A stretch of 64,000 nucleotides of DNA from Macrostomum lignano (taxonomy: Eukaryota): positions 1-64,000 of the forward strand of contig NIVC01002150.1 of assembly GCA_002269645.1 (NCBI GenBank), given 5' to 3'. The position numbers were made by a program, and so were the translations under genes. Within the stretch, counting starts at the first letter, position 1. Every line of letters starts with the position of its first letter. Below the pieces are notes generated by a model. It made no database searches, was not told the DNA's origin, and was given only the letters and a program-made list of their open reading frames with translations. Below, piece after piece: positions 4,814-36,355 of this stretch.

Positions 4814-6609
4814 ATGCCAGCCGAAACCGAGGAGATTCCCGAGATCGACATGTCGCAGCAGTCGGAGGCCGTGGTTGCTGAGCAGCTGGTGTCGGCGCTC
4901 ACCACCGTCGGCTTCTGCTATGCGGTCGGCCACGGCGTCCCGCAGGAGACGGTGGCGTCCGCCTTCGCCGAGTCGGCCGGCTTCTTCGAGCGTCCGCTGT
5001 CCGAGAAGCTGCGGCACCGTCGCGACTGGCGCAAGTCGACCTGCGGCTACATCCCGCCTCACTGGGCCAGCACCGGTGACCCGGACGAGCCTCCCGTCGA
5101 GCGGTTCAGCCTCGACGCTCCGCCGGACGAGAAGGAGGTGCTGGACGTGTGCCACACCTGTGACGACACCGTCTGGCCCTCGAAGTCATTCCGGAAGGCT
5201 TCGCTGGACCTCATCAGCGCGGCTCAGGTAAGTTGAGTCTGATACAGTCACCATTATTCACCGTTATTCACTACTCAGCTACAGCTATTTTTCCGACGCT
5301 CCCCGCAGGACCTGACGCTGCGCCTTGTGCGTCTAATCGGCCGGGGCCTCGGCCTCAGCCCTCCCGACCAGCTGGCTGACGCCTTCGCGGGATTCGCTAC
5401 GCCCGGAAACACCAGCGAGCTGCGCATGCTGCACTACCCGCCGCTGCCACCGGTGACTGACGGCACAGTCTGTGGAGACAGGTGCGGAGAGCACACTGAC
5501 TATGGAATCATCACGCTGGTGTTCTGCGACTCGCAGCCCGGACTGCAGGTGAGAAGTTGCTGTTTCTACTATCGGTAATAAACAACTCACATCCTGAGCG
5601 CCTGATATTCGAGCAGTTTGATGTCTGATGTTCGATGTCTCCTGAAACATGCTTAGTAATTGAAAAATCTCTTTATTATCTCTTTTTGTCCCCTAAATCT
5701 CTTCATTAGGACTAAGTATTGGAGGGGGGGCAATGCCGACAAAATCTTAGGGAACAGATGTACCCCTGTATGTATGATAATAAAAATAATAATAGTACTA
5801 ATAATAATAGTAATAATAATAATAATAATAATAGTAATAGTAACTGATTACACCTGCCCTAATGGGCAGATGTGCAACCGACAGCTCAGCCGCAGCTATT
5901 GTCCAAGGACTGGGGGGTCGCCACACACACCCTCAATTACCCTAGCTAATGCTGGCACCCATTTTACAGCTGGGTGAACTGAAGCAATGCAGGCGGAAGT
6001 ATCTTGCTTAAGGACACAAATTGTTCCGAGTGGGATCGGAAATCGAACCCCCGACCTTCAAGTCGTGAGTTCGACTCTCTAACGACTAGAAAACCTACAA
6101 GAAAAATAAGCTTTTGATATGCAGTTACCATCGAAACGTTTTGGTCGCGTAAATCTCTTTAGACATTATTCGTTCGCATCTCTTATACAGCTTTGTTAGC
6201 CGCCTAATTCGTACTGTTTTTTCAAAGAGAATTCGCATGATCGTGAACCTAGAAAAAACACCACCATCCTCACCTGTCAGGTGCTGTCCCGGTCTGCCCG
6301 CTACCTTGACGCGAACCCGCGTCCGGTCGCGTCCTGGTGAACATCGGCGACCTCATGCAGCGCTGGACTGGCGGTCGGCTACACTCCGCCAGGCACCGAG
6401 TGCTGGCACCGACTGACCCGAAGCTGCGCTCCCAGCCTCGCTACAGCTTGGTGTACTTCACGCAGTGCGACGACGAGTACATTGTCCGACCGTTGCTAGG
6501 AGACCCGGACAGCTTCCCGCCGGTGAAGACCGGTGAGCACATGCGCAGGCGCTTCGAAGAGACCTTCCTGCTGGGCCAGGGCATCGACCCGCAGCTGCCG
6601 CCGCTCTGA
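4814..6609 (+). CDS. 2-oxoglutarate/Fe(II) oxygenase (IPNS/DIOX_N + 2OG-FeII_Oxy type), paralog A; 1-nt deletion in exon 3 (pseudogene or assembly error)
   Basis: Exons 4814-5227, 5309-5548 and 6281-6609 with GT-AG introns, all phase 0. Motifs: VGFCYAVGHGV (DIOX_N), RCGEHTDYG (HxD), HSARHRV (distal His), RYSLVYF (RxS). Compared with paralog B, CCTGGT reads CCGGT at 6324/6325, giving a premature TGA at 6338-6340. Confidence 0.88.
5776..6096 (-). mobile_element. tRNA-derived CORE-type SINE in intron 2 of oxygenase A
   Basis: The reverse complement matches the copy at 34060-34360: tRNA-like head with B-box-like GGTTCGATTTCC, CORE-like GTGTCCTTAAGCAAG...CAGCTGTAAAATGGG, and a (TTA)n tail. It has a deletion of about 35 bp relative to the other copy. 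Confidence 0.85.
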
Positions 6610-7870
6610 CCAGGGCCGAAACCAACGATGGAAATGCTGCCGTTACTTGAACTGTTGATTTCCACTCAATACCAATTAGAATGCTGTTTGGTACCCAGAA
6701 ATTCCCACATGCACTAATAGTGTTTGAATATTTCTGTCCTTTTGTCGCGTTAATTTAGTAGATGCAATGATACAATTCATCTTTATGCATAAATTAGCGT
6801 AACATTATTCTCAATGATTACCGTGTGTTACCATTAGGTATTTTCAGATTTGCCTCATTTTCTTCCAAAAAGTAAATTTTGTTAAAGTTGCGAATTTTCT
6901 TTAGGTAAACTGCTTCTTGTTACCCATGAATATACTCGGCATCATTATATTTTTTTAAATAAAAATTTCTTAAAGCCTTGACAAAAGCCTTAGCCCCTGA
7001 TAATATTTTGCAGTGCATGGGGCGGACAAGCCTGAATTCTACAGAACAGCATCTGTACTTGGCGTATGACCTTCTTTTGTCTGAGCGCACAGCTTATTTC
7101 TGTCACCATCGAATTATTTGGCATCAATGGAAAAAAAGACTCTTCCATTTTAAATTTACCTCGTATACGCATAAAAACAGTTTGCAGTTTAGCTTGTACA
7201 TGCTTTATATGCTCTCAGCTAAATCAACTAGAATTACTTTTAGCGTTCAGACTCGTGTGTTTCAAGACTTCATATTGAAATTTCATATCAACAAAACTTC
7301 ATATCCGAAACTTCATATCTCAGTTGGGATTAAGGCTATGGTTAGGGTTAGGTTTAGGCTTGCCGGGCATATGAAAGGTTCGAAGATATAAAAGGTTCCT
7401 AAAAATCAATGAAGACACACGACGGAACAACCAGAGCTTGAATTAGCTCATTTGCCGTTCTATTTTTGTCAGTAAAAGAGACGGAGAACTGTCGCATAGA
7501 GAGGAGGGAGTGGAATGTCACTCGCGCATGCTTGAAGGACCGATAAGAACAAGAAGAAACTGGCTGGAGTAGAGAAGATCGAGGGAAGGACGCCGAAGCA
7601 GCGCTGTTGTACAGCTGGAGTGCATCCATTATTCACCCGCTATAGGACAGGTGTGCAATGCAACTCCGTCACCGCAGTCTATTCCGTCACTGTCTGCATA
7701 GCCATTGACTAATCCGGGCCATTGACGGCAGACTCTCCGCTCCCTCCCTGCACCGCCAAGCAGCAAGGCCTCCCCTCCGCGTACAAAAGCAGAGCCCAGT
7801 GCAAAGCGGCCCCGCACAAGCAGACACGCGGAACACCCGATTAACCCACAGACTTGCGAATCGCAACGAA

Positions 7871-9177
7871 ATGCCAGCTGAAACTGAGGAGATTCCCGAG
7901 ATCGACATGTCGCAGCAGTCGGAGGCCGTGGTTGCTGAGCAGCTGGTGTCGGCGCTCACCACAGTCGGCTTCTGCTACGCGGTCGGCCACGGCGTCCCGC
8001 AGGAGACGGTGGCGTCCGCCTTCACCGAGTCGGCCGGCTTCTTCGAGCGTCCGCTGTCCGAGAAGCTGCGGCACCGTCGTGACTGGCGCAAGTCGACCTG
8101 CGGCTACATCCCGCCTCACTGGGCCAGCACCAGCGACCCGGACGAGCCTCCCGTCGAGCGGTTCAGCCTCGACGCTCCGCCAGACGAGAAGGAGGTGCTG
8201 GACGTGTGCCACACCTGTGACGACACCGTCTGGCCCTCGGAGTCGTTCCGGAAGGCTTCGCTGGACCTCATCAGCGCGGCTCAGGTAAGTTGAGTCTGAC
8301 GCATCGGAATTGCAGCTTAAGCAGTGCACAGACCCTCAGACGTTTCTCACCTACTCTGCATCATTAAGTAGCTCAGAGCTGCTACCGACAATAACAAAAA
8401 TTTGCTGCTCAAAAGTCTGAACTTAAAACAGAGGAGCAGCGTCACAAGGCGCTCCTAAAACCGAGTGCAGGACGCCAGCGTCTGATCAGCATCCAGCCAC
8501 CCATCACCTCAGTAACTCTTATTGACGCTCCTCGCAGGACCTGACGCTGCGCCTGATGCGTCTGATCGGCGGGGGCCTCGGCCTCAGCCCTCCTGACCAG
8601 CTGGCCGACGCCTTCGTGGGATTCCCCACGCCGGCGAACACAAGCCAGCTGCGCATGCTGCACTACCCGCCGCTGTCCACCGATACCAATGGGTCCGCCA
8701 GCGGCGACCGATGCGGAGAGCACACCGACTACGGTTGCATCACGCTGGTGTTCTGCGACTCGCAGCCCGGACTGCAGGTGAGCTTCCATGCTGCTTCACT
8801 TGTTTGACGCTTTCTGTGTCTGAAACATTTGCCATTGTCCTCGTCAGGTGCTGTCCAGGACTGGTCGCTACCTTGACGCGAACCCGCGTCCTGGTCGCGT
8901 CCTGGTGAACATCGGCGACCTCATGCAGCGCTGGACTGGCGGTCGGCTGCACTCCGCCAGACACCGAGTGCTGGCACCGACTGACCCGAAGCTGCGCTCC
9001 CAGCCTCGCTACAGCCTGGTGTACTTCACGCACTGTGACGACGATTTCACTGTCCGACCGTTGCTAGGAGACCCGGACAGCTTCCCGCCGGTGAAGACCG
9101 GGGAGCACATGCGCAGGCGCTTCGAAGAGACCTTCCAGCTGGGCCAGGGCATCGACCCGCAGCTGCCGCCGCTCTGA
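7871..9177 (+). CDS. 2-oxoglutarate/Fe(II) oxygenase, paralog B (intact, 327 aa)
   Basis: Exons 7871-8284, 8538-8777 and 8848-9177, GT-AG, phase 0. HTD...H iron triad and RYS motif are intact. Confidence 0.93.
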
Positions 9178-10944: not shown

Positions 10945-11259
10945 AGGGAATCAGCTTTTCCTATAGTACTTCGTGTACTTGTAGGATCTGGGGAATCAGC
11001 GGTACCCATAGTAGTTCATGTACTTGTAGGAGCTGAGGAATCAGCGGTACCCATAGTAGTCCATGTACTTGTAGGAGCTGAGGAATCAGCGGTACCCATA
11101 GTAGTCCATGTACTTGTAGGAGCTGAGGAATCAGCGGTACCCATAGTAGTCCATGTACTTGTAGGAGCTGAGGAATCAGCGGTACCCATAGTAGTCCATG
11201 TACTTGTAGGAGCTGGGGAATCAGCGGTACCCATAGTAGTCCATGTACTTGTAGGAGCT
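10945..11259. repeat. 45-bp tandem repeat, 7 copies, derived from the last codons and stop of the CCDC181-like CDS
   Basis: The minus-strand unit encodes SSYKYMDYYGYR-stop; the copies farthest from the CDS are the most degenerate. Confidence 0.93.
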
Positions 11260-13403
11260 GGCTACAAGTAGAGCATTGGCCAGAGCCTGCGACTTCCTTG
11301 ACCGGCGCATGGCCAGCTGGGTCACGCGGGCCCGCTGTCGCTCGCACATCTCCTCGTATAGTTTCTGCTCTTCCTTGCGACGGAGCCACCTGGCAGAGAA
11401 TTAACGGGTTTTGAATGAGTACAGTCCAATGGCTCTAAATGATTCAAATTTTTGTTCACAGCCAGCCGCTTGCGAGTAAGAAAATGCAAACCAGGAAATT
11501 ACCAGACAGCAAAAAGAAAATACAGTTTTGTGCTTAGTTTTCTACACCGAAATCACCCCACATTGACAACTCGTCACTGAAACCGATGCCAGCATTCTCT
11601 GCGTATTACGTATACTTGCGCTTAATTGAATTAAGAAACCAACTCTTCTACTGTTAGTAGTCGCATTGAGTATTTCTTATCGATTTTGTCCTAAATAAAA
11701 TTGAACGACGCATCCCTGAAGCTGGAGGCCGGGTAGGGTCTCCTTCAGAGATCAATTATGCATTGGATTGAGGCACATATTTGAACCCATTGGTAGGCAA
11801 GCTAAAAAACTCTGTCAGCAAGAATTAACGCGGCTCAGTGTTTCTAAGCTTCACTAAGTGAATTTTAGCTGCAACCTGTCCAACATGGGCTGGTGGATCA
11901 AAGCTGGGTCAGTACTCTCTGCTCTTGCACCTGTCACATTGGATTAAGGATTAGCAAATGCTTGTTCTGGAAAGAATTTCGAAGTGCAATAAAATAAATT
12001 CACTTACAGCTTGAAAGCCCTCCGGCACTGCCTTGAAGTGCGCGTCTCAGAGTGCTCAATCATCTCCTCGCGCTCCATCTCTTGGTATTTCTTCTCCTTC
12101 TTCTGCTGCTTCCGCTTGCTCTGCAGCCAGTCTTCGAAGCTCGGCTTGCCATTCCGCTGGCGCTCTTGCTGCTCCTGCTCTTCCTGCTGCCGCTGCCGCC
12201 GCTCCGCCTCTTGGCGCTCCTTCTCGTCTTTCTGCTGCTCACTTTTGGCGCGCAGCCAAGCATCAAAGCCGGCGCCATTGTCTTGACGCTGCGCGCGCTC
12301 ACGCGCCTCGGCCTCCTCGCGGCGCTCCCGCTCTCGCCGCTCCCGCCGCTGCTGCTGCCGCTTGGCCCGCAGCCAGGCCTGGAATGCCAGCTCGTTGTCC
12401 CGCTCCCGCTCGTCCTGGCAACCGTTGCTACGCGCGCTGCCCGGCCGGCCGTTGCCGTTGACTGACGAGCGGCCGTTTGAGTCGCGCCGTTGCTGCCGCG
12501 GCGCCGAGCTCGGCCGGCCGCGTGGACCGCCGCCACCGCCGCTCGGCTCCCCGTTGCTTTCGCTGTCGCGGCCGCTCAGCTCCAGATCTTCGTCGCTGTC
12601 GCTGTCGATTTGATCGGCTTCCACCTCTCGCCTATCGACGTACTTGTACTGGCCACCGTCGCTGACTATAAGCACCTTCCCTGAGCCCGGCTGGTCGCCG
12701 CCGCCGTCCGTCTCCACTGGTTGCTGGCGATCCGGCGTCGATTTCTCAGCGTCGTCGCTGTCGGTCTCCGGCCGCTGCTCGGGTGGCGTCTGAGGCGGCG
12801 AATCGTCTGAATCGGCCTCGTCCTCGGCCGGTAGCTGCGTCGGTGGTGACGGCGACGGGGCGACCTGGACGAGCTCGGCGCTGAATCGAACCCGTGACGG
12901 CCTGGCCGCGGATTCCTCTGGCGACGGTTCACGCTCCAGTTCGGCATTGAGCTGGTCGAGCCGGGCCAGGGTATCCTCGTAGTCGGGGCCGGGCTCTGCG
13001 AAGGGCACCGGTGGTCGATTTTGAAACGTATTTTTCAGGCCAATTAAATTCTCCAAAAACTGACTGCCCTCTACATCCAGCATGGAGTTCTTCAGCTTTA
13101 TCTTCTGGAACTTTGAAGTTGCCTTGAAGCAAATTCAAGTAAATCGTATTTCAGCTCACCTTGCAAAGCCTTTAGAAATTCATCGTCGGCTTCCTCTGGA
13201 ATTTTTATTTATTTAGGCATTAATAATCGCATCAAATCAAAGGAAATTTTGAAAGTAGGACACATAGTGGCAAAAAGAGAGCTTGACACACCAGTCCAAT
13301 CATCAGCGCTGATTGTCTGCAGCCTGTCTAACTCCTCCATTGCTGCTAGCTGATCATCTCTCAGGCCGTACTCATCATGTTGTGGCTCATCCTGCTCAGT
13401 CAT
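11221..13403 (-). CDS. CCDC181: Coiled-coil domain-containing protein 181-like (microtubule/cilia-associated), about 434 aa
   Basis: Phase-compatible exons 13403-13292, 13195-13160, 12995-12008 and 11389-11221 (1305 nt, open). Family-like motifs recognised from memory: RLDQLNAEL...RVRFSAELVQV, KVLIVSDG, repeated AFQAWLRAK/FDAWLRAK/FEDWLQSK/AFKLWLRRK, and C-terminal YKYMDYY. Confidence 0.78.
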
Positions 13404-16345: not shown

Positions 16346-17190
16346 TGTCTGTGAGATCTGCCTGAGAGATCTATCCGATATTTGTCAGAGATCTGTATCG
16401 CTGAGATCTCACAGAGATCTGTCTCTACAATCCGCATCAGAGATCTGTGCCTGTAAATGAGACCATACTCTAAGATCTACGAGTAACACCGTGCTCTGTC
16501 GCTCAGCCACCGTCTGTGACTAAATTTCCTATATAAGAATTATAGTTTAATATTGCTTGTCTCTGGGTATTAATCATTTCCGGGATGTACTTCAGACCCG
16601 ATGAGCTTCACAAACCAGATTAGATTAGCATCTACCAGCGCAAAGCTCTCCAGAGTCCAAGTCCAAACCTCAGCGATAGGAAAGCATAAGCGGCAGGAAT
16701 AGAGGATATTTATGACTCGCGCCAAGAATTCCCAACTGAGGGTGGGGGAGCAGCCGAGCTAATGGAATATCTCCTTAATTATTTTTTGAGAAAGCAAAAA
16801 TAAATTATTAGAGAGAGATAGAGAGAGGGGCGCACAATCGCTGTTAAGATAATTGATTCCGGACTCGACTGCCACTCCAAATTGTCATCGGAGACGGCAG
16901 TCGAATGAGGTTTTTTCTCTACTTGGCTCGCGAGAAAAATGAATTAATGCAATGGGGATCTTCATTATTTGGCATCGGTATTGAGTGCGTGTCGCATTTC
17001 GGCACTAGCTGACAAAGTTTTCAGACAGTTGGCCGCAAATGTTATCACCAGCATCTCGCCTGCTCTCGTCTGTTGGCCTAAACAATTAGATCAACCGCAG
17101 AATTGATAATTTGCCTGATAAAGTTCAGAGTCAGTTGGTAATTCTGCAATTTCCATATTGTGCACTTTTGTATGGCATATTTATACTTCT

Positions 17191-18281
17191 GGGATGGGTG
17201 AATGGGGCGATGGGTGATTCTGGGATGGGTGATTCTGGGATGGGTGTTGTGGGATGGGTGATTGTGGGATGGGTGATTGGGGGATAGTTGATTGGGGGAT
17301 GGGTGATTGTGGGATGGGTGATTGGGGGATAGTTGATTGGGGGATGGGTGATTGTGGGATGGGTGATTGGGGGATAGTTGATTGGGGGATGGGTGATTGT
17401 GGGATGGGTAATTGGGGATAGTTGATTGGGGGATGGGTGATTGTGGGATGGGTGATTGGGGGATAGTTGATTGGGGGATGGGTGATTGGGGATGGGTGAT
17501 TGTGGGATGGGTGATTGGGGATGGGTGATTGGGGATGGGTGATTGGGGGATGGTTGATTGGAGGATGGGTGATTGGGGATGGGTGATTGTAGATGGGTGA
17601 TTGTGGGATGGGTGATTGTGGGATGGGTGATTGTGGGATGGGTGATTGTGGGATGGGTGATTGTGGGATGGGTGATTGTGGGATGGGTGATTGTGGGATG
17701 GGTGATTGGGCCGGGGATAGTTGATTGGGGGATGGGTGATTGTGGGATGGGTGATTGGGGGATAGTTGATTGGGGGATGGGTGATTGTGGGATGGGTGAT
17801 TGGGGGATAGTTGATTGGGGGATGGGTGATTGTGGGATGGGTGATTGGGGGATAGTTGATTGGGGGATGGGTGATTGGGGATGGGTGATTGTGGGATGGG
17901 TGATTTGGGATGGGTGATTGTGGGATGGGTGATTGGGGGATGGTTGATTGGAGGATGGGTGATTGGGGATGGGTGATTGTAGATGGGTGATTGTGGGATG
18001 GGTGATTGTGGGATGGGTGATTGTGGGATGGGTGATTGTGGGATGGGTGATTGTGGGATGGGTGATTGTGGGATGGGTGATTGTGGGATGGGTGATTGGG
18101 GGATGGTTGATTGGGGGATGGGTGATTGGGGATGGGTGATTGGGGATGGGTGATTGTGGGATGGGTGATTGTGGGATGGGTGATTGGGGATGGGTGATTG
18201 TGGGATGGGTGATTGGGGATGGGTGATTGTGGGATGGGTGATTGGGGATGGGTGATTGTAGGATGGGTGATTGGGGGATGG
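17191..18281. repeat. G-rich ~15-bp satellite (GGGATGGGTGATTGT/GG), about 1.1 kb
   Basis: Direct periodicity, with two or more G3 runs per unit on the + strand. Confidence 0.97.
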
Positions 18282-18901
18282 ACGATCGAATGACTGATAT
18301 TTTTTGAAGCTTTGATGTGCGCCTTTGGTTTTCTTTATTGTTAATCTAGATGCCACTAAAAAGATCTAATTTTAATAGAATATATTAATTGCTAGGAAAT
18401 TATCAAGATCATCACGTGACGAACCGCGCCTCCTATGATCAGGATCAGGATCGCAGGTGAATTGGGCATCTATGGCAGACGCTATTCTCACTCATGTTTC
18501 AGATCTAACCAAAGCAGAACTTCCATCAGCATAACCAACTCAAACACCCAAGCTGTGAGATCAGCTCACAGCTCATTTGCTCATCAGTTCTTTTCGTTGC
18601 CAGCACTTCTCAATCGAGGAGCAGCCAATCAGACGACTTGAGCTCTGCGATTCTGGGATTTGGGATTGGCTGGCAGTCCCGATGAAGACCTGAGCTCACA
18701 GCACAGCGAAAATCTCTTATTCAAATTGAAAGAGTACGGCTGTTCAGTCGCTAGTCCCGATTTTGACCAGCCAACGCTTTCCAGTCGCCCGAAACTCTTC
18801 TTCAGTGAGTGCATCGAAGCTTTTCATTTCAGCTGCACAGGTGCGAGTGCTGAATACTTGTTGGAGTGTATGCCTGTTTGTACAGGACTGTTGGCTGCTG
18901 A

Positions 18902-18920
18902 CACAGACAGACAGACAGAC

Positions 18921-18987
<67 letters not shown>

Positions 18988-18988
18988 G
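18902..18988. repeat. (GACA)n microsatellite
   Basis: Direct. Confidence 0.97.
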
Positions 18989-19195
18989 CCGCTCCTGCAG
19001 TGACAGGAACATAAACATTCATCTCCATTCTGTGTCGGCAAAACAGCAAGCAGCAAACAGCTCAAGCTCATTAGGCTAAAATTGGTCACGCATTTCTGCA
19101 CACAAAAGGCTTTCTCTATTGATCAATACCGCTCCAGGAAATGATTAATACTGTATCTTGCTCTGTTTACCATCGCTGATTCAACAGGCAAAGAG

Positions 19196-20996
19196 ATGCT
19201 CCGCAGACTGGAGACCACCGGCCTCATGCTTGCTGTCTGCTGCCTGTCGCTGCTCCTGGCTTCGAGCGGGCGCGTCGCCCTGGGCGAGGTGAGAAACACA
19301 ATGACTTTCTGCGATCTGGGACTGCTGTAATGAGCTCTATTCGCATTCGCAGTCTGAATACATTCGCGCATCAATTGTGCATTCGCTCTCCTTTGCAGGG
19401 GCGTAGCCAGGGGGCAAGGGCTGAGGGCGCGGTCCCTCCCCAATATGGCTGGCAAAGGTATATGGCGCCCCCTAGCAACAGCTTTGGCTTTGGGGGGGGG
19501 GGCTTTGGGAAGGGGCAGAGCAACTCAGCGGTAAAACGCGTCTGACTCTCGCGTCACAGACCTCTGGTTCGATTCCGTGTGCGGCTACTTTCATTTGAGG
19601 CTTGTGTGGCCCAGGGAGTTGTCGCACGATTCAAACCCACACGGCCAACTTCAAAAGCACAGAGACTGTACATGCCTGACGATTAGAAAGTCAGGGCCGC
19701 TGTACACCCTGTGTGAGCGTGTATGAGTGCGTGCCTGCGTACAGTATTGGCGCGCTTGTATGATTGTGGGACGATGTCGCCGAAGACGTTGCGCCAGGGT
19801 AGCTGTGCCTACAGAGGTGCAGAATCCCCTTGACTGCGTTCCTCCTCTTTCGTGCTTGAACGGGACAATGAGAGCGGAGCAAAGTGATTGTGTGGGAATG
19901 TCATCAGCGTTCCGTATCTGCTTTCTCTCTTAGTAGTGTTCATTAGGAATATTACCGTCCTTAGCTATCATTGGGCTGCAACAGGTCTAAGAATATTCTT
20001 TTTCGACTCATTCAGACCGCCGAATTCGACAACGACGGCGATGCGCTGACCGAGTACCAGTTGATGCCAGATCGCGACGAATTGCTGTCGGACGAGTTCA
20101 AAGACTACGACGACTGGTCGAAGAGGAACTTGGGGTCTGCTCTGCGCTTGCGCGGAAAGAGACACATGGGATCACCTTTCCGCTGGAGGGGTAAGAAGAA
20201 CATGGGATCTGCCATGCGATTCCGCGGCAAGAAGAACATGGGATCTGCCATGCGATTCCGCGGCAAGAAGAACATGGGATCTGCCATGCGATTCCGCGGC
20301 AAGAAGAACATGGGATCTGCCATGCGATTCCGCGGCAAGAAGAACATGGGATCTGCCATGCGATTCCGCGGCAAGAAGAACATGGGATCTGCCATGCGAT
20401 TCCACGGCAAGAAGAACATGGGATCTGCCATGCGATTCCGCGGCAAGAAGAACATGGGATCTGCCATGCGATTCCGCGGCAAGAAGAACATGGGATCTGC
20501 CATGCGATTCCGCGGCAAGAAGAACATGGGATCTGCCATGCGATTCCGCGGCAAGAAGAACATGGGATCTGCCATGCGATTCCGCGGCAAGAAGAACATG
20601 GGATCTGCCATGCGATTCCACGGCAAGAAGAACATGGGATCTGCCATGCGATTCCGCGGCAAGAAGAACATGGGATCTGCCATGCGATTCCGCGGCAAGA
20701 AGAACATGGGATCTGCCATGCGATTCCGCGGCAAGAAGAACATGGGATCTGCCATGCGATTCCGCGGCAAGAAGAACATGGGATCTGCCATGCGATTCCG
20801 CGGCAAGAAGAACATGGGATCTGCCATGCGATTCCGCGGCAAGAAGAACATGGGATCTGCCATGCGATTCCACGGCAAGAAGAACATGGGATCTGCCATG
20901 CGATTCCGCGGCAAGAAGAACATGGGATCCGCCATGCGATTCCGCGGCAAGAAGAACATGGGATCCGCCATGCGGTTTTATGGCAAATATTATTAG
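19196..20996 (+). CDS. Neuropeptide precursor (357 aa): signal peptide, acidic spacer and 24 predicted amidated nonapeptides
   Basis: Exon 1 (19196-19288) encodes the signal-peptide-like MLRRLETTGLMLAVCCLSLLLASSGRVALGE and ends at a GTGAGA donor. Exon 2 (20016-20996) follows a TTCAG acceptor in phase 0. It has an acidic pro-region, then KR/KK-flanked peptides each ending in Gly: NLGSALRLRG, HMGSPFRWRG, NMGSAMRFRG x18, NMGSAMRFHG x3, NMGSAMRFYG x1. Confidence 0.93.
19396..19460 (+). mobile_element. Probable truncated left end of a GC-rich MITE (CAGGGGCGTAGCCAGG...)
   Basis: Resembles the CAG-starting GC-rich termini of the two complete MITEs in this window; no matching right end or TSD found. 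Confidence 0.35.
19518..19590 (+). mobile_element. tRNA-like SINE head remnant in the neuropeptide intron
   Basis: A-box-like CTCAGCGGTAAA and B-box GGTTCGATTCC at tRNA-like spacing; no complete cloverleaf. Confidence 0.35.
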
Positions 20997-21192
20997 ACAA
21001 ATTTGATGTAACGATCGTACATTTGAAAAACTATTTGAGAACCAGGAAAATATAATTTAGCTGCCGCGAATACTCCGCTGCCGTCGATCGCTGCAGATCA
21101 GAGATATGAATTGTTTAAAAAATTCAAGCTTAAGATGCCCTGAAACTCGATGTCGTATTGTCGTACTTGACGTATTTGTAGAAACAGATATT

Positions 21193-21979
21193 GCTTTTGT
21201 CAGCCTAACTGAGAATGAAGCCATCCAAACTGAGAATCCTCCATAGGAAGGGCCTTGGCTGCGTCTTGCCTTAGGCTTAGTCTATGGGCCATGGACTGCA
21301 AAAGCCAAGCAAAATGATGAAAAGCCAGACACACTGAGAATCGATCGGTTTCCTTCTTTCCCAGCTCCCTCCAGCCCCTCCGAGCTCAACCCTCTTCGAT
21401 CACTGCTTCTCCAACTCCAGCGCCAAGTTGCGAATAAATAAAGTACACGACGTATAAAATTGGATCGCTTATTTACTTCTACCATTCTAAGTCGGGAATC
21501 CGTAGTCTATGGTACAATAGAGTGGATTAAAGCATTTAATCTACTTGAAATCGGAAGCATTAAATTGAACATAGTTTGAGTGAATGCTAACGAAGGAATT
21601 TTATGTAAATAAGCAATGATATTTCGTATATGATAAACGCTTTTCAATTCATAGTCTATGGTTAGAACATCCTCGGCAGCATTCAATTTTTCAAATGTCC
21701 GATGCTGCATATAACGGTCCCGAGGCGAAAAAACGGGCCGAGGACCATTGAGTGCTGCCGAGGACGTTCTAACCATAGACTATGAATTGAACAGCGTTTA
21801 TCATTTACATAAACCAATCGATTCTCAGTGTGGGTGGCTTTTATCACTTTGCTTGGCTTTTGCGTCTATGGCCCATAGACTAAGGCAAGGACGCAGCCAA
21901 AGCCCTTCGCAGGCAGCGTACGCTCGTATGGAGGATCCCCAGTTTGAATGGTTTGATTCTCAGTTAGGTTGTCAAAAGC
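21193..21979. mobile_element. Foldback/MITE-like long imperfect palindrome (arms about 230 bp) with a ~250-bp insertion in the left arm
   Basis: 21811-21979 is the reverse complement of 21193-21351. 21747-21812 is the reverse complement of 21600-21610 plus 21630-21697. Loop about 21698-21746. Confidence 0.75.
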
Positions 21980-22643: not shown

Positions 22644-23141
22644 TCAATGCTCAAGTGTTAGCAGTACGCACATCTGTGGGTGCACTATCACTCGCTCATA
22701 CAGGTGCAAGCCCCTGCATGAGCCAATGTACACAAAAGCCACCTGGCTGAACTCCTCAAGCCGGACGCCCTTGCTGCAGCGGTACCTGTCCCCATCCAGA
22801 GACTTCGGTTCTGCGGACAGGCAGACCCGGTCCGTGAAGCAGGGAGCGCCGCCAAGGCACGGCTTGCCCTCGAAGGTGAAGTTCTTCGTCTGAGCGAACG
22901 GGCACGGAGAGTCGCCGTCGCCCACAGGCGGTTCGGTCACGCTTGCTGGGCCGCCTCGCAGCTCGGCCGGTGGGGCCAGAGAGAAAATCTGCTGGCCCGA
23001 TGCCAGCTTGTCCTGCGACAGGCCGGGCACCGAGGCGCTGCACGACCTGAAGAGGTCGCCGGCTCCGAGGGGCGCTGCGAGAATGGGAGCGGGGAAAATC
23101 CAGAGGGCCAGCAGAGGGGAGATTAAGCAGAAAAACTGCAT
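22644..23141 (-). CDS. Putative secreted cysteine-rich protein, family not recognised (165 aa if unspliced)
   Basis: N-terminal hydrophobic signal-like segment MQFFCLISPLLALWIFPAPILAA, GC-rich codon usage, and 8 Cys after the signal. The C-terminus is uncertain because of a possible donor CAG|GTGGCT at 22743/22742. Confidence 0.65.
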   Translation of the reverse strand: MQFFCLISPLLALWIFPAPILAAPLGAGDLFRSCSASVPGLSQDKLASGQQIFSLAPPAELRGGPASVTEPPVGDGDSPCPFAQTKNFTFEGKPCLGGAPCFTDRVCLSAEPKSLDGDRYRCSKGVRLEEFSQVAFVYIGSCRGLHLYERVIVHPQMCVLLTLEH

Positions 23142-31350: not shown

Positions 31351-34300
31351 ATGTCTGCAGAATCAGCACCCGTGGAGCAGCCGGCCCCGTCAGAGGCGCC
31401 AGCCGAGGGGTCCAGTCGCAAACGAGCAAACGATGACCTGCTGACCCGAACTGGCGGGGCCTACATACCGCCAGCTAAACTGCGCGCAATGCAGGCCTCA
31501 ATGTCCGACAAGTCTAGCGAGCAATACCAGCGGGTGGCCTGGGAGGCGCTTAAGAAAACTCTTAATAGCCTAATTAACATGACTAATGTGACCAATCTGC
31601 CTAATATTGTTCGCCAATTACTATCGGAGAATCTGGTCAGAGGCCGGGGCTTGTTCATCCGGTCTCTGATGACCAATCAGGCCACCTCACCTGTGTTCAC
31701 GCCCGTCTTTGCCGGCCTAGTGGCCGTTGTCAATACTAGATTTCCGCAGATTGGCGAACTAGCCTTGAAACGCCTCATACAGGAGTTGAAAAAGGCTTTT
31801 CGGCGAAACAATAAAGAGACTTGTTTGAATTCTTGCACTTTTCTGGCTCACCTCATCAACCAGCGAGTTGCTCACGAGGTTCTGGCTCTGGAAATTCTCG
31901 CCTTGCTGCTCAACAGGCCGACGGACGGCTCCGTTGAGATTGCAGTCGGCTTCCTTAAGGAGGTCGGCGCCAGACTGTTGGAGACTGCACCAAGAGGACT
32001 GCGCATGATCTTCGATCAGCTGCGGGGCATCTTGCACGAGGCCGCGTTGGATAAGCGAGTCCAGTACATGATTGAGACTCTGTTTCAGGTGAGGCTCGCT
32101 GTGCATCAGTGCTACCTTGTGTTTTAGTACCTGTGATGGGTGATATTTAGTACCGGTTCTAGTACCTGTCCCGGTGTCTTTATATTATAGGGGCGGGGTT
32201 CCGGTGTTACCTGTTTTTACTACTGATACTATGGTATTTTTCTTTCATTCGATGCGACCATGCAACTCATATTTTAGTACGCTCGTACCGGTGCTATTTA
32301 TCTTCTAGTATCGGCTCTCTTTGTCTCAGCAATGGTGCCTTGAGCCTTTTAGTAAAGTCGTGTCTTTTTGCACCGGTGTTGTCTGTCTTACCGGTTCTGA
32401 GTGTCTTCAGTCCCGATGCCACCTGTTTTTGATGTAGGTAGCTGATTACACAGAATATCACCCAGAACGCTCATTCGCACTCTCTGTATGACAGTCGCAG
32501 GGCAAAAAAGATACGCACTGAGCCTACTCTTGGGGTGAAGAAAGCAAGTAGTACAAACCATATAGACAATCTAAAGTAGCCATCTAAACAAAATGTGCAA
32601 TTGTAGTATGAGACAAGTGTATGCAAAAATGAACAAGTTTGCATCGTATATATCATTTAAGCTATCATTATAATTCTGCCCTATTGTTATTACTATTGTA
32701 ATGATATGTCAGTAGTGATTTCAGCATCAACTGTTTTTTAATTTCTAATCTCGCAGGTCCGCCAGGACGAGTTCAAGCAGTACCCATCAATCCAGGAGGC
32801 CCTAGACCTAGTGGAAGAGGAGGACCAGGTGACTCACCTGCTCAGCCTGGAGGATGAGCACGACACTGAGCAGGCGCTGAATGTATTCCGCTACGATCCG
32901 GACTATCTCACCCACGAGGACGAATACAAGGCTATCCAACGGGAGCTGCTCGGCGACGGAGACGACAGTAGCAGCGACAGCGACAGCGGCAGCAGCGACG
33001 GCAGCGAAAGCGAAGACGACAACGAAGCTGGCGAAGGCGCAGATACGGAGGCTGCGGCGGCGGCTAAGCCGGCCATCGACCAAACCCAAGCCCAGCTAGT
33101 GCAGCTGCGCAAGACCATCTACCTGACTGTGCAGAGCAGCCTAGACTACGAGGAGGCGGCCCACAAGCTCCGGCGGATCCAGCTGCGGCCTGGCGAGGAT
33201 GCCGAACTGGCCAGCATGATTCTGGACTGCTGCGCCCAGCTGCGCACCTACGAGAAATTCTACGGATTGATGGCGCAGAGATTCTGCCAATTAGACAGAG
33301 CCTACGTGCAGCACTATGAGAGAATCTTCACTGAGCAGTATAATACTATTCACAGGCTGGAGACGATGAAGCTGCGCAATGTGGCCAGATTCTTTGCTCA
33401 CCTGTTGCACACTGACTCAATCTCGTGGGGCGTCATGCAGTGCGTGCAGCTCACTGAGCAGGGCACAACGTCTTCTAGTAGGATATTTCTGAAGATCCTG
33501 TTCCAAGACCTGGCCGAGCACATGGGCTTGGAGAGGCTCTCCCAGCGCTTCGCCGACTGCACTCTGCAGGCATTCTTCGAGGGCCTGTTCCCGCGGGATC
33601 ATCCGCGCAATACCCGCTTCTCGATTAACTACTTCAAGAGCATCGGCCTCAACGGAGTCACCCTGCCGCTGCGCCAGTGGTACGAGACTGCACCAAAGCC
33701 CAAGGCTGAGGAGTCTGATTCCTCGGAGTCTTCCTCTTCTAGTAGCAGTTCGTCTTCGTCATCGTCCTCTGATTCTGACTCAGACTCGGATGATGAGGCG
33801 TCAGCTAGACGGAAGCGGAGTAGCGGACGGGCCAGCCGATCAATCAAGCAGGAGCCTAAAGAGGCTGCGGCACCTACTGATGAAGGCAGGCAGCGGCATG
33901 GGTAAGCTGTTAACTAAATATCCCCACACTCACACAGAATGTGCAGCGGCCCGGACTTGTCCCTAATTCTGGTGTAAATCTTATGGAAATATCCTTAACT
34001 TAGATTCAACTTTCGTTTTAGTTTTATCATTAGTACACTATTTAAAGTGCACTATTATAGGGGTTTTAGCCTAGTGGTTAGAGCGTCGGACTCATTACAA
34101 AGGTCGGGGTTCGATTCCCGATCCCAATCGAAACTATTTGTGTCCTTGAGCAAGACACTTAAATCTGCATTGCTTCAGTTCACTCAGCTGTAAAATGGGT
34201 GCCAGCATTAGCTGGGGTAATTGAGGGTGTGTGTGGCGACCCCCCAGTCCTTGGACTGAACAGCCGTACGCAGCCTTCAGATGCGCCGCGCAATAGCTGC

Positions 34301-34795
34301 GGCTGAGCTGTCGGTTGCACATCTGGCCATAAAGGAAGGTGTAATCAATTATTATTATTAGATACTCGTACTATTAAAGCTTGATGTGCTATTCTCGCTA
34401 CTCGCCAGTAGGTTATACAAGCAGCAGTAACCCACCTGTACTTTTTTCTAATCCCACACAGCCGACAGTCGGACGCGGCTGTTGATAAGCAGTCGGAGAG
34501 GCGGCGAGGCAGCGGTCGCGATCGAGACCGCGACTATGAACGTGACGACGGCGATGAATCTCGTCGGCCAAGTCGCGACAGTCGAGATAGTCGGCGAGCC
34601 TCGGACAGGCGCGACAACAACGATCAGCATCGTCGGGATGTCGGAGACCACAGCCACGATCGATCCCATCGCGACTCAGTCGAGCGTCGGCGACCTGTCG
34701 ACGATAATAGGAACGGCGATAATCGCCGAGGGACGCAGATCCGTAGCGAAGTTCGCCTTGTCGGCGATCGAAGCGAACGAGGAAGTCGCCGATAG
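31351..34795 (+). CDS. CWC22: Pre-mRNA splicing factor CWC22 (MIF4G + MA3 domains, RS/RD-rich tail), about 738 aa
   Basis: Exons 31351-32088, 32757-33901 and 34462-34795 (2217 nt, open). Hallmarks: [74 protein letters not shown]. Confidence 0.96.
34060..34360 (+). mobile_element. Full-length tRNA-derived CORE-type SINE in CWC22 intron 2
   Basis: A box TAGCCTAGTGGTTAGAGC, B box GGTTCGATTCC, MIR/CORE-like GTGTCCTTGAGCAAGACACTTAA...CAGCTGTAAAATGGG, and a (TTA)n tail; second copy at 5776-6096. Confidence 0.88.
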
Positions 34796-35638: not shown

Positions 35639-36355
35639 CTGGTGCTGTCAGACAAGTCCATCGGGCCGGGCAAATGGTCCGACTACACCTGCGTGCTGCC
35701 CAGCGTGTCAGTCGGCAACGTTGGCCAGCTGGCTGCCGACCTGATCATCAGCTCCGGCCGGCTGTACTCGGTGGGCTACTGGCACAGCGCCTCGCTGACC
35801 CCGGTGTGCGGCCCCGGCCCGTTCGGCGGGCCGCCCTGCACAGCCGCCGAACTGTGGGAGAGCGAGCAGCGCCGCATCGTTGTGCTGCAGCTGCGCTCCC
35901 CCGTGCTGGCCTGTCGAAGGCGGCGCTTCCTTGACGAGGCCTGCAACCTCATCGCCGAGTGCGGCTTCGCCCGCGTGCTGCTGCTGGCCAGCGCATGGGA
36001 CTCGTCTAGGCGGGAGCCCAGCTGCCCGTCGCTTGGCTTGGCCGGCTCGCCCGGTTGGCCGAATCCCGCACCAGAAGGTCTCGAGTTCGAGCCGCTAGAG
36101 CCGGAGCGTCGCCTCTCCGGCGTCGGCCTGGCCGGGCCGCTGTTCCGCCGGCTGGCCGCCGACTCGCGCCCGACTGGCACGGCTTTGGCCTGCCTGTTCT
36201 GCTCCGAGGGCGACAATTCCGGACACGCCGGACAGTTGGCCGAAGCTGCGGCCGCCATTCTCGGACAGCCGGGCCTGGCGCCGGTACCTGGACGGCCTCT
36301 GCCGTCGTCCTGGCGTCTGCTGTACGGCAGCCGGCCAGTCGAAGGCTTGTATTGA
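35639..36355 (+). CDS. PSMG2: Proteasome assembly chaperone 2 (PAC2); the genomic ORF lacks any ATG
   Basis: PAC2 signature VLPSVSVGNVGQLAADLII, plus LQLRSP, LFCSEGDN and PSSWRLLYG. The ORF opens after in-frame TAG 35615-35617, starts at acceptor CCCGCAG|CTG (35638/35639, phase 0) and has no Met codon. Confidence 0.9.
   Translation: MVLSDKSIGPGKWSDYTCVLPSVSVGNVGQLAADLIISSGRLYSVGYWHSASLTPVCGPGPFGGPPCTAAELWESEQRRIVVLQLRSPVLACRRRRFLDEACNLIAECGFARVLLLASAWDSSRREPSCPSLGLAGSPGWPNPAPEGLEFEPLEPERRLSGVGLAGPLFRRLAADSRPTGTALACLFCSEGDNSGHAGQLAEAAAAILGQPGLAPVPGRPLPSSWRLLYGSRPVEGLY

What the first reader, a model, noticed from the sequence alone, without database searches (positions are those of the whole stretch)
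19196..20996. Multi-copy neuropeptide precursor with an unusual -RFRamide / xxGSxxRxx-amide signature
Seen in the sequence: a signal-peptide exon, an acidic spacer and 24 dibasic-flanked, Gly-terminated nonapeptides (NLGSALRLR, HMGSPFRWR, NMGSAMRFR x18, NMGSAMRFH x3, NMGSAMRFY). Established knowledge: KR/KK cleavage, carboxypeptidase E trimming and PAM turn X-G-K-K into X-amide. Inference: the products look like GSLFRFamide/FMRFamide-type peptides extended by one residue. Because position 9 varies (R/H/Y), it is probably part of the mature peptide rather than a monobasic cleavage site. I do not recognise this C-terminal motif as a named family, so it may be an undescribed ligand family with its own GPCR.
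Basis: partly seen in the sequence, partly recalled or inferred. Interest (0 to 1): 0.78.

Follow-up and report, generated by a model that had tools for sequence, protein, structure and literature searches.

The report
Flatworm HIGA-type multi-copy neuropeptide gene
This is a real gene of the flatworm Macrostomum lignano that encodes 24 copies of a short, probably amidated signalling peptide, but it belongs to an already named peptide family (HIGA in annelids and ribbon worms, probably related to NPLP1/HIGSLYRamide in arthropods), not to a new one.

Summary
A signal-peptide exon (19196-19288) splices with GT-AG, phase 0, to 20016-20996. The product has an acidic spacer and 24 nonapeptides: NLGSALRLR, HMGSPFRWR, NMGSAMRFR x18, NMGSAMRFH x3 and NMGSAMRFY. 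The same exon junction is in UniProt gene models of Macrostomum lignano, so the window comes from that flatworm or a very close relative.

The family assignment does not hold. The conserved part is the N-terminal core [N/H/Y]-[M/L/I/V]-G-[S/A]-A-[M/L]-R-[F/L/Y], not an RFamide-like C-terminus. In M. lignano paralogues the "amidating" Gly is often Ser, Ala or Phe. That core, placed right after dibasic sites, defines the HIGA pro-neuropeptide of Platynereis (HLGAAMRLV, HIGAAMRLRP) and of nemerteans (HLGSAMKFGKR). A matrix built only from Platynereis HIGA scores all five window peptide types at p <= 4e-5, and unrelated precursors score nothing. HIGA precursors also match crustacean HIGSLYRamide/NPLP-type precursors (one relative of unknown origin carries HVGSAMRYRG), and those match Tribolium Nplp1.

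FMRFamide-, sNPF/LFRFamide-, myomodulin- and LXRX-type readings were tested and rejected.

Verdict: a new flatworm member of a known family, unusual only for 22 near-identical short Gly-KK-ended copies. Expression, the mature peptides and the receptor were not shown.

The parts
18696..18840 (+). 5' untranslated exon. The 5' end is not defined; the 3' end is at 18840, with donor G|GTGCGA.
   Evidence: tblastn of the N-terminal part of UniProt model A0A1I8IBN3 (P0241) maps ...EAFHFSCT(G) to 18696-18842. The model then continues KEMLRR from 19188 (sequences). It contains no in-frame ATG.
18841..19187 (+). Intron 1 (347 nt, GT-AG), which contains an (ACAG)22 microsatellite at 18903-18988.
19188..19288 (+). 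Exon with the start codon (ATG at 19196). It encodes MLRRLETTGLMLAVCCLSLLLASSGRVALGE, which is the signal peptide.
   Evidence: The M. lignano paralogue L001 has the same exon layout.
19289..20015 (+). Intron 2 (727 nt, GTGAGA...TTCAG, phase 0). It carries a piece of dispersed repeat at 19667-19762.
   Evidence: The junction ...VALGE|TAEFD... is present in P0135 and P0241.
20016..20126 (+). Acidic spacer TAEFDNDGDALTEYQLMPDRDELLSDEFKDYDDWS followed by a KR cleavage site.
   Evidence: 13 acidic residues out of 35.
20127..20198 (+). Two divergent copies: NLGSALRLR-G-KR and HMGSPFRWR-G-KK.
   Evidence: The H-x-G-[ST]-P-[FW]-R-W type also occurs in the paralogues as HVGTPWRW. It resembles HLGSAIRWV of Platynereis HIGA.
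20199..20954 (+). Array of 21 units of 36 nt, each NMGSAMRF[R/H]-G-KK. There are 18 Arg units and 3 His units; the His units are the 8th, 14th and 21st peptides. The units are 99% identical in DNA.
20955..20996 (+). Terminal copy NMGSAMRFY-G-K-Y-Y followed by the TAG stop. Only a single Lys follows the Gly.
   Evidence: The paralogues also end with a C-terminally extended copy, YLGSAMRFRSTARYNGPYRY.

Best explanation
This is a three-exon gene of Macrostomum lignano, or a very close relative, for a HIGA-type pro-neuropeptide.

Inferred pathway, by analogy with established prohormone processing:
1. The signal peptide takes the 357-aa precursor into the secretory pathway.
2. Prohormone convertases cut after the KR/KK pairs.
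3. A carboxypeptidase E-type enzyme trims the basic residues.
4. Amidating enzymes convert the exposed Gly.

Predicted products:
- about 18 NMGSAMRFR-NH2 ([M+H]+ 1068.52)
- 3 NMGSAMRFH-NH2
- 1 NLGSALRLR-NH2
- 1 HMGSPFRWR-NH2
- an acidic spacer peptide
- a C-terminal copy that is either NMGSAMRFY-NH2 or the uncleaved NMGSAMRFYGKYY

The part that probably carries receptor recognition is the N-terminal core [N/H/Y]-[M/L/I/V]-G-[S/A]-A-[M/L]-R-[F/L/Y]. The gene shares this core with annelid and nemertean HIGA peptides and, more distantly, with arthropod NPLP1/HIGSLYRamide peptides. The C-terminal residue and the amide are variable extras.

The 21 near-identical 36-nt units, with a His variant recurring every 6-7 units, point to recent unequal crossing-over or concerted evolution. 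This raises the dose of one peptide.

Shown here: the gene structure, the coding frame, the paralogues and the family similarity. Inferred only: neuronal expression, the actual cleavage and amidation, and the receptor.
For: Gene and frame:
- Canonical splice sites and an exact peptide count.
- The same phase-0 intron position in paralogue L001.
- Only synonymous differences between identical peptide units of the two paralogues.
- UniProt M. lignano models contain the spliced junction and the 5'UTR exon.

Family:
- Among 5.8 billion proteins, the only close homologues are M. lignano proteins (E 7e-51 to 5e-30).
- Those paralogues share non-repeat copies with P0203, a HIGA-type precursor. HLGAAVRFGGERRWRY... 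aligns with HLGSALNMRFGGWRYRQ.... P0203 matches Platynereis HIGA at 1e-38.
- The window protein against Platynereis HIGA gives 107 bits, E 2e-29.
- Against nemertean HIGA it gives 4e-11 and 1e-6. Those HIGA sequences do not match the spurious periodic protein P0125 (E 3-10).
- A position-anchored matrix built only from Platynereis HIGA post-dibasic 9-mers scores all 5 window peptide types at p 7e-6 to 4e-5 and 8 of 11 paralogue copies at p < 1e-3. It scores 0 of 19, 0 of 35, 0 of 6 and 0 of 16 copies of the kinin, LXRX, P0187 and Lingula precursors.
- Nemertean HIGA includes short Gly-dibasic copies such as HLGSAMKFGKR.
- Conzelmann 2013 reports repeated similar peptides and amidation for Platynereis HIGA; its mass-spectrometry support is stated for the peptide group that includes HIGA, not for HIGA alone.

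Processing machinery: the M. lignano PC2 homologue is expressed specifically in the nervous system and is essential (PMC4490696).
Against: - No expression, read-level transcript or peptidomic data were available, so a neuronal origin and the mature products are inferred.
- E-values that involve the 22-fold repeat are inflated. An unrelated 12-residue-periodic protein (P0125) also scores 2e-25 against the window protein.
- Most window copies start with Asn rather than the His that gives HIGA its name.
- The window's copies are short, directly abutting and Gly-ended, whereas most Platynereis HIGA copies are longer, carry acidic tails and are not amidated.
- In the paralogues Gly is replaced by Ser, Ala or Phe, so amidation is not a conserved requirement.
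- The copy number may depend on the assembly. The older gene model has 7 units and then a frameshift.
Confidence: 0.8

Rival explanations
1. The peptides are FMRFamide/LFRFamide/sNPF-type RFamide peptides lengthened by one residue, forming a new -RFRamide ligand family whose C-terminus carries the activity.
For: 18 copies contain ...MRF-R-G-KK. NLGSALRLR and the paralogue copy NMGSAMRLRF-KR recall the sNPF ending ...RLRFamide. UniProt auto-named one gene model 'Pro-FMRFamide-related neuropeptide FF'.
Against: No copy has RF-G. The C-terminus varies (RFR, RFH, RFY, RLR, RWR; RLRS, RLRA and RLRF in paralogues) while the N-terminal core is invariant. The exhaustive HMM search over 1.84 billion representatives gave HIGA/NPLP-like precursors; none of the copy-dense hits I read was an RFamide, sNPF or LFRFamide precursor. 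There is no Pfam FARP hit, even at E <= 10. 'RFRamide' occurs in no paper of the library.
Confidence: 0.04
2. The family is restricted to Macrostomum and arose on its own. Its resemblance to HIGA/NPLP copies would then be convergence on a short motif next to cleavage sites.
For: Close homologues are found only in M. lignano. The shared core is short, 7-9 residues. Similarity statistics for repeats are unreliable (P0125 artefact). Direct similarity to insect Nplp1 is not significant (E 0.2-0.7).
Against: The match is anchored in position directly after dibasic sites, and all copy types pass a matrix built only from Platynereis. Non-repeat copies are also shared (HLGAAVRFGG..WRY in the paralogue; H-x-G-S-x-x-RW). 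Non-periodic nemertean HIGA sequences hit the window protein at 4e-11 but do not hit the artefact control. The chance of the core motif at a given site is about 1e-5 (my own estimate from residue frequencies).
Confidence: 0.1
3. The gene is a diverged myomodulin-type precursor (...MLRL/LRMamide), in which ...AMRL-R would be a myomodulin-like end with an extra Arg.
For: GSAMRL resembles xSMLRL by eye. Myomodulin-like precursors are reported in flatworms (De Oliveira 2019, PMC6425005).
Against: Myomodulins have a conserved C-terminal LRL/LRMamide and a highly variable N-terminus (PMC6425005). That is the opposite of the pattern here. None of the copy-dense hits read from the exhaustive search was a myomodulin precursor. 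Every copy has Arg, not Gly, after RL or RF.
Confidence: 0.03
4. The gene is a true HIGA-family homologue, but it makes a non-neuronal secreted product, for example a gland, epidermal or reproductive-tract peptide made in bulk. That would explain the 22-fold amplification.
For: No expression data were obtained. The very high and very recent copy amplification is typical of products needed in quantity. Drosophila Nplp1 is also produced by imaginal discs (PMC12800252 abstract).
Against: HIGA was described as a pro-neuropeptide in Platynereis and nemerteans. HIGSLYRamide precursors come from crustacean cerebral ganglia. High copy number is also common in true neuropeptide precursors.
Confidence: 0.1

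Closest known systems
HIGA pro-neuropeptide: Platynereis dumerilii, GenBank KF515947 (Conzelmann et al. 2013, PMC3890597), and nemertean HIGA (Thiel et al. 2021, PMC8557429)
   Same: Both have a signal peptide and many copies that each start directly after KR/KK with [H/N]-[L/I/M]-G-[A/S]-A-M-[R/N/K]-[L/F]. Near-identical copies exist: HIGAAMRLRP, HLGSAIRWV and HLGSAMKFGKR against NMGSAMRLR, HMGSPFRWR and NMGSAMKFRGKK. Both families mix amidated and non-amidated copies.
   Different: The window gene has Asn, not His, at position 1 in 23 of 24 copies. Its copies are exactly 9 residues, all Gly-ended, with no acidic linker between them. Twenty-one units are almost identical in DNA. Platynereis copies are 12-25 residues long with acidic tails. 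HIGA has not been reported from flatworms in the papers I could search.
Arthropod NPLP1 / HIGSLYRamide precursors: Drosophila and Tribolium Nplp1, and crustacean HIGSLYRamide
   Same: Both are multi-copy precursors whose copies share a conserved N-terminal consensus and have variable C-termini, only some of them amidated (Veenstra 2014, PMC4237046). HIGSLYR-G-KK in Scylla is a short amidated copy with the same H-Φ-G-S-Φ-Φ-R skeleton. Relatives of the Oratosquilla precursor carry HVGSAMRYRG, HVGSALRYRP and NIGAALRYRQGKR. Platynereis HIGA matches crustacean precursors at 1e-21 to 1e-28, and those match Tribolium Nplp1 at 1e-5 to 1e-10.
   Different: The link from the window gene is transitive only. 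The window protein against Tribolium Nplp1 gives E 0.7, and against the Scylla fragment 0.015. Typical insect copies read x-[IV]-[GA]-[ST]-L-A-R-x-x-x-L-P and are longer. The one known receptor, for Drosophila NPLP1-VQQ, is the guanylyl cyclase Gyc76C (cited in PMC4237046 and PMC4022047). Nothing comparable is known for flatworms.
M. lignano paralogues PAA81134.1, PAA53821.1 and BOX15_Mlig018182g1 (P0001, P0244, P0003), annotated 'hypothetical protein'
   Same: They share the same peptide core, the same intron position, and NMGSAMRFRGKK units that are identical at the protein level.
   Different: They have 9-10 copies, many with Ser, Ala or Phe instead of Gly, plus a C-terminal region with longer HIGA-like copies (HVGTPWRWSVPNY, HLGAAVRFGGERRWRY...). 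Overall identity is 40-51%.
FMRFamide-like, LFRFamide/sNPF, myomodulin and LXRX families
   Same: All are short multi-copy peptides flanked by dibasic sites, with an Arg-aromatic element near the C-terminus.
   Different: Those families are defined by their C-termini (RFamide, LRL/LRMamide, L-x-R-x on acidic peptides). Here the C-terminus is the variable part. Platynereis LXRX shows no similarity (E > 2).

Membership tests
HIGA pro-neuropeptide family (spiralian) | A secretory precursor with many copies, each starting directly after a dibasic site. | tested here: met
   A signal-peptide-like N-terminus, with 24 copies after KR/KK.
HIGA pro-neuropeptide family (spiralian) | The copy N-terminus follows the consensus H-[I/L]-G-[A/S]-A-M-[R/N]-L. 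| tested here: met
   A PSSM built from Platynereis HIGA alone gives p 7e-6 to 4e-5 for all 5 window peptide types, and the controls give no hits. Position 1 is Asn in 23 copies and His in 1.
HIGA pro-neuropeptide family (spiralian) | Significant whole-precursor similarity to named HIGA sequences, beyond repeat artefacts. | tested here: met
   Platynereis HIGA: 107 bits, E 2e-29. Nemertean HIGA: 4e-11 and 1e-6, while these sequences do not hit the periodic artefact P0125. Paralogue P0001 and HIGA-type P0203 share non-repeat copies. Statistics that involve the 22-fold repeat are inflated.
HIGA pro-neuropeptide family (spiralian) | Copies are long, separated by acidic linkers, and mostly non-amidated, as in Platynereis. 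| tested here: not met
   Window copies are 9 residues, abutting, and all Gly-ended. Nemertean HIGA does contain short Gly-dibasic copies such as HLGSAMKFGKR and HLGSLMKGKFGKK, so this trait does not hold across the whole family.
HIGA pro-neuropeptide family (spiralian) | Neuronal expression and peptides detected by mass spectrometry. | not testable with these tools
   No expression or peptidomic data for M. lignano were reachable.
NPLP1 / HIGSLYRamide family (arthropod) | Copies share a conserved N-terminal consensus and have variable C-termini (Veenstra 2014). | tested here: met
   The [N/H/Y]-Φ-G-[S/T]-x-x-R skeleton is shared with YIGSLAR, NVGTLAR, HIGSLYR and HVGSAMRYR. The C-terminus varies among the Macrostomum copies.
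NPLP1 / HIGSLYRamide family (arthropod) | Significant direct sequence similarity to a named NPLP1 or HIGSLYRamide precursor. | tested here: inconclusive
   Window against Tribolium Nplp1 gives E 0.7, against Scylla HIGSLYRamide 0.015, and against Oratosquilla P0217 2e-8 (inflated by the repeat). The transitive chain is strong: HIGA to crustacean precursors 1e-21 to 1e-28, and those to Tribolium Nplp1 1e-5 to 1e-10.
NPLP1 / HIGSLYRamide family (arthropod) | A shared receptor (Gyc76C-type guanylyl cyclase for VQQ; the other peptides are orphans). | not testable with these tools
   This is known only from the literature (PMC4237046, PMC4022047).
FMRFamide-like / LFRFamide / sNPF peptides | A conserved C-terminal R-F-amide (RF-G-dibasic in the precursor). 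| tested here: not met
   No RFG occurs in any of the 24 copies. The endings are RFR, RFH, RFY, RLR and RWR. No copy-dense precursor of this type was among the hits read from the exhaustive search, and Pfam gave no hit.
Myomodulin | A conserved C-terminal LRL/LRMamide with a variable N-terminus (PMC6425005). | tested here: not met
   The pattern here is the opposite: an invariant N-terminal core and a variable C-terminus.
LXRX (lophotrochozoan) | Acidic copies ending in L-x-R-x, for example DVEEELQRV. | tested here: not met
   BLASTP of the Platynereis LXRX sequence against the window protein returned no hit at E <= 10.

The most novel reading that the evidence does not exclude
Spiralian HIGA and arthropod NPLP1/HIGSLYRamide may be one ancient protostome peptide family, defined by an N-terminal [H/N/Y]-Φ-G-[S/A]-x-Φ-[R/K/N] core. 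I found this equation in no paper I could search: Conzelmann 2013 listed HIGA as Platynereis-specific, and Thiel 2021 does not mention NPLP. The Macrostomum gene would then extend the family to flatworms. It would also offer a natural 'minimal ligand', a 9-residue amidated core made in about 22 copies, for finding the still unknown receptor of most peptides in this family.
Probability: 0.5. Interest if true: 0.55.

Novelty: new member of a known kind. Interest (0 to 1): 0.33.

Why it matters
For annotation, this locus and its paralogues are labelled 'hypothetical protein', 'Allatostatin-A' or 'Pro-FMRFamide-related neuropeptide FF' in public databases. HIGA-type pro-neuropeptide is the defensible name.

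For biology, M. lignano is a flatworm in which RNAi is already used (PMC4490696). A HIGA-type gene whose product is essentially one short peptide in high dose is a convenient way into a family whose function and receptor are unknown in spiralians and mostly unknown in arthropods.

The graded similarity from flatworm to annelid and nemertean HIGA, then to crustacean HIGSLYRamide/NPLP, then to insect Nplp1 suggests the family is older and wider than the papers I could read state.

It is not a new kind of ligand, and nothing about its predicted processing is unusual.

Tried and rejected
- Literature string searches for RFRamide, GSAMRF/GSAMRL, GSVFRF and HLGAAL-type strings found nothing relevant.
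- Pfam scans of the window protein and six relatives gave only noise.
- McVeigh 2009 (flatworm npp families) is not held. I did not try to fetch Koziol 2016. I therefore could not check whether an npp number already covers this gene. The Taenia npp supplement holds no matching strings.
- The marine-flatworm review has nothing on Macrostomum.
- Species identification through the neighbouring CWC22 exon failed: the best hits were 55-62% identical and none was from Macrostomum. The organism was identified instead from UniProt models that contain the locus's own protein.
- The exhaustive profile search was dominated by unrelated proteins with a 12-residue 'LGSSLSLRSFAR' period and S74-chaperone-like tails (E down to 1e-21). 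Its E-values could not be used directly, so I switched to a position-anchored matrix test and to non-periodic HIGA sequences as queries.
- The search with the Oratosquilla protein returned no named relatives. Its identity as HIGSLYRamide/NPLP-type was shown instead with the Scylla and Tribolium sequences taken from paper supplements.
- The Lingula precursor (YGSVFRFPYGKR) looks similar by eye but fails the anchored test, so I left it unresolved.
- LXRX was considered because of its name and rejected.
- ARAGORN and Rfam found no RNA gene in the window.
- Structure prediction was not run. A short-peptide precursor is not expected to fold.
Full report
**1. What is in the sequence**

Reading 18900-21300 and listing the ORFs shows an ATG at 19196. 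It is followed by MLRRLETTGLMLAVCCLSLLLASSGRVALGE and a GTGAGA donor at 19289. An AG acceptor (TTCAG|ACC) opens a 981-nt frame at 20016-20996. The two exons join in phase 0 to give 357 aa.

The N-terminus has two Arg, a hydrophobic core (Kyte-Doolittle up to 2.8) and small residues at SSG/ALG. This is the shape of a signal peptide. SignalP was not available. A 35-residue spacer with 13 acidic residues follows.

After the spacer come 24 nonapeptides: NLGSALRLR, HMGSPFRWR, NMGSAMRFR x18, NMGSAMRFH x3 and NMGSAMRFY. Each is followed by Gly and KK/KR, except the last, which is followed by G-K-Y-Y-stop. Tandem Repeats Finder reports a 36-nt unit, 21.7 copies and 99% identity. Seventeen units are identical in DNA. 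The His variant (CGC to CAC) is the 8th, 14th and 21st peptide, which suggests recent duplication of blocks of 6-7 units.

The open frame is not evidence on its own, because three minus-strand frames of the repeat are open too.

**2. It is a real gene, and the organism is Macrostomum lignano**

A search of 5.8 billion proteins found only three relatives. All are M. lignano 'hypothetical' or mis-fused proteins (E 7e-51 to 5e-30).

Their genes have a phase-0 intron at the same place, directly after the signal peptide...AVIAE|gtgagt...ttcag|SANS. Their NMGSAMRFRGKK units differ from the window's unit at 4-5 of 36 bases, and every difference is synonymous. That shows selection on the peptide in this frame.

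The exhaustive profile search returned P0135. Its cluster mate is P0241. They are UniProt A0A1I8IIH1 and A0A1I8IBN3, both from M. lignano.
- P0241 contains the window's protein exactly through the junction: ...GRVALGE|TAEFDNDGD....
- It then has 7 repeat units and a frameshift, which indicates a collapsed array in the older assembly.
- Upstream it carries a 5'UTR exon that maps to 18696-18840 and joins 19188 through a GT-AG intron.

So the window is M. lignano or a very close relative (taxonomy). I did not see reads.

**3. Which part of the peptide is conserved**

In the paralogues the copies read:
- YLGSAMRLR-S-KK
- NMGSAMRLR-S/A-KK
- NMGSAMRFR-G-KK
- NMGSAMKFR-G-KK
- SMASAMRLR-G-KK
- NMGSAMRLR-F-KR
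- HVGTPWRWSVPNY
- HLGAAVRFGGERRWRY...
- YLGSAMRFRSTARYNGPYRY

The Gly that would give an amide is often Ser, Ala or Phe. The end varies (RFR, RLR, RWR). The start x-[M/L]-G-S-A-M-R is invariant (alignment). This is the reverse of an RFamide-type family, where the C-terminus is the constant part.

**4. Finding the family**

The exhaustive HMM search was dominated by unrelated proteins with a 12-residue 'LGSSLSLRSFAR' period. Its E-values therefore cannot be taken at face value.

I screened the hits for dense G-K/R-K/R sites. That left a few true peptide precursors:
- P0203, from a metagenome, with copies such as HLGAAMNM..., HLGSAMKFRQ... and HLGSALNMRFGGWRYRQ...
- P0200, with NIGSARRFTGKR and NLGSARNFL..., next to GVESLARNGELPGKR.
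- P0217, from the mantis shrimp Oratosquilla, with HIGSLFR... and HIGSLLR... (species name).
- A Lingula protein.

Relatives of P0217 carry HVGSAMRYRGN, HVGSALRYRPDKR and NIGAALRYRQGKR. HVGSAMRYRG differs from NMGSAMRFRG at only three of ten positions.

The literature gave three anchors.
- Veenstra 2014 (PMC4237046) states that NPLP1 copies share a conserved N-terminal consensus.
- Veenstra 2016 (PMC4888303) states that peptides of the NPLP precursor are also called HIGSLYRamides.
- The Platynereis supplement of Conzelmann 2013 holds a precursor named HIGA (GenBank KF515947). Its copies include KRHLGAAMRLVQPK..., KRHIGAAMRLRPSKFEDKR, KRHLGSAIRWVD... and KRHIGADMRFAE....

Conzelmann 2013 describes HIGA as having repeated similar peptides and amidation, with mass-spectrometry support stated for the group it belongs to. 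It found no orthologue outside Platynereis at that time. Thiel 2021 found HIGA in nemerteans. Those sequences include HLGSAMKFGKR, HLGSAMNSRFGKR, HLGSLMKGKFGKK and FLGAAIRYRQ....

**5. Testing the match**

BLASTP of the window protein against Platynereis HIGA gives 107 bits, E 2e-29. The artefact control P0125 also reaches 2e-25 against the window protein, so repeat-driven scores are inflated. I therefore used three tests that do not depend on the repeat.

(a) A position-specific matrix was built only from the 22 distinct 9-mers that follow dibasic sites in Platynereis HIGA.
- All five window peptide types score at p 7e-6 to 4e-5.
- Eight of 11 paralogue copies score at p < 1e-3.
- The kinin, LXRX, P0187, Lingula and P0125 post-dibasic 9-mers give no hit at p < 1e-3.

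(b) Non-periodic nemertean HIGA sequences hit the window protein at 4e-11 and 1e-6, and the paralogues at 5e-10 to 4e-5. They do not hit P0125 (E 3-10).

(c) The paralogue P0001 shares non-repeat copies with HIGA-type P0203: KRHLGAAV--RFGGERRWRY...QGKRYLGSAMRFR aligns with KRHLGSALNMRFGG-WRYRQGESKRHLGAALKFR. P0203 matches Platynereis HIGA at about 1e-38.

I conclude that the window gene is a HIGA-family member.

**6. The wider link to NPLP1**

Platynereis HIGA matches:
- crustacean precursors at 1e-21 to 1e-28 (Penaeus P0249, Armadillidium P0247, Oratosquilla P0217);
- the named Scylla HIGSLYRamide fragment at 3e-6 to 2e-8.

The Scylla fragment matches P0249 at 1e-27.

Tribolium Nplp1, taken from the Thiel 2021 supplement, matches the crustacean set at 1e-10 to 1e-5. 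It matches HIGA only at 2e-3 to 1e-2, and the window protein not at all (E 0.7).

The chain is graded and plausible, but for the window gene it is transitive. I rate homology with NPLP1 at about 0.5-0.6 and give it as the novel case, not as the finding.

**7. How it most likely works**

By analogy with established prohormone processing, the precursor enters the secretory pathway. It is cut after KR/KK by PC2- or PC1/3-type convertases, trimmed by a carboxypeptidase E-type enzyme, and amidated at the exposed Gly.

Predicted main product: NMGSAMRFR-NH2 in 18 copies, [M+H]+ 1068.519. Arg9 is part of the peptide, because in relatives it is followed by Pro, Gln or Ser with no cleavage site. The last copy may stay as NMGSAMRFYGKYY.

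The pattern of conservation places the active part in the N-terminal core. The receptor is unknown. In this family only Drosophila NPLP1-VQQ has one, the guanylyl cyclase Gyc76C (cited in PMC4237046 and PMC4022047). Neuronal expression, cleavage and amidation are all inferred.

**8. Novelty and limits**

This is a new flatworm member of a named family. Its features of note are the Asn start, the exact 9-residue Gly-ended copies with no linkers, and the very recent 21-unit amplification. Short amidated copies exist elsewhere in the family (HIGSLYR-G-KK, HLGSAMKF-G-KR), so even that is not new in kind.

I could not read McVeigh 2009 or Koziol 2016. An existing flatworm 'npp' number for this gene therefore cannot be excluded. 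The origins of P0200, P0203 and P0250-P0252 are unknown; they come from Logan and ENA assemblies.

Noticed in passing
window 4676-5236 and 7799-8293 (+): Two near-identical ORFs hit Pfam DIOX_N, the N-terminal domain of 2-oxoglutarate dioxygenases (E about 1e-18 each). This looks like a tandem gene duplicate about 3 kb apart.
   Followed up: partly
window 5818-6089 and 34106-34334; L001 12952-13272; L002 14165-14456: A dispersed repeat occurs twice in the window. It also lies 3-4 kb downstream of both M. lignano paralogue genes, at 72-75% DNA identity and up to 97% in translated pieces. It is probably a transposable-element fragment, so I did not use it as evidence of synteny.
   Followed up: partly
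window 19520-19590 (inside intron 2) and 19667-19762: A stretch that looks tRNA-like to the eye (...GGTTCGATTCC...) is called neither by ARAGORN nor by Rfam. A nearby 96-nt piece is 80% identical to another M. lignano contig (L002 6791-6878). It is possibly a SINE-like element in the intron.
   Followed up: partly
window 11255-12910 (+ frames) against 12004-13083 (-): UniProt model A0A1I8IBN3 ('Allatostatin-A') is a chimera. Its N-terminal 300 residues translate the antisense strand of a CCDC34-like gene (Pfam CCDC34, E 1e-6, below the family's cut-off) and are fused to the peptide precursor. The UniProt names 'Allatostatin-A' and 'Pro-FMRFamide-related neuropeptide FF' for this locus are not supported.
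   Followed up: yes
window 31351-32127 and 32811-33905 (+); 35642-36355 (+): Neighbouring housekeeping genes: CWC22-type splicing factor exons (MIF4G and MA3 domains) and a PAC2 proteasome-assembly chaperone. The best CWC22 matches in the protein collection were only 55-62% identical, and none was labelled Macrostomum.
   Followed up: partly
window 22644-23141 (-): A 165-aa ORF 1.6 kb downstream of the peptide gene, on the opposite strand, starts with a signal-peptide-like stretch (MQFFCLISPLLALWIFPAPILAAP) and has several Cys. It has no Pfam hit. It may be a small secreted protein.
   Followed up: no
window 17181-18356, 41000-44800, 45989-46679, 50192-50836, 52398-54913, 59446-61506: There are many long simple or short-period arrays: (ACAG/GTCT)n, (CT)n, and units of several bases up to a few tens of bases, open in several frames. 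The 4-kb bins at 16-20 kb, 40-44 kb and 52-64 kb show strong strand skews in GC or AT.
   Followed up: no
P0151, P0242 (Lingula anatina XP_013414106.1, XP_023932045.1): An uncharacterised brachiopod precursor has about ten copies of YGSVFR[FLM]P-x-G-KR. It looks like the Macrostomum core by eye (Φ-G-S-Φ-Φ-R-Φ) but lacks the first residue and fails the HIGA-anchored matrix test. I found these peptide strings in no paper.
   Followed up: partly
P0125, P0127, P0130, P0132 and similar hits: A large set of proteins from unnamed sources has a strict 12-residue 'LGSSLSLRSFAR/LGSALSVLDF' period and a C-terminal ...SDRRLK... tail that, from memory, resembles an endosialidase-type chaperone domain. They outscore true relatives in profile searches with this peptide array, which is a trap for repeat-based homology searches.
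   Followed up: partly
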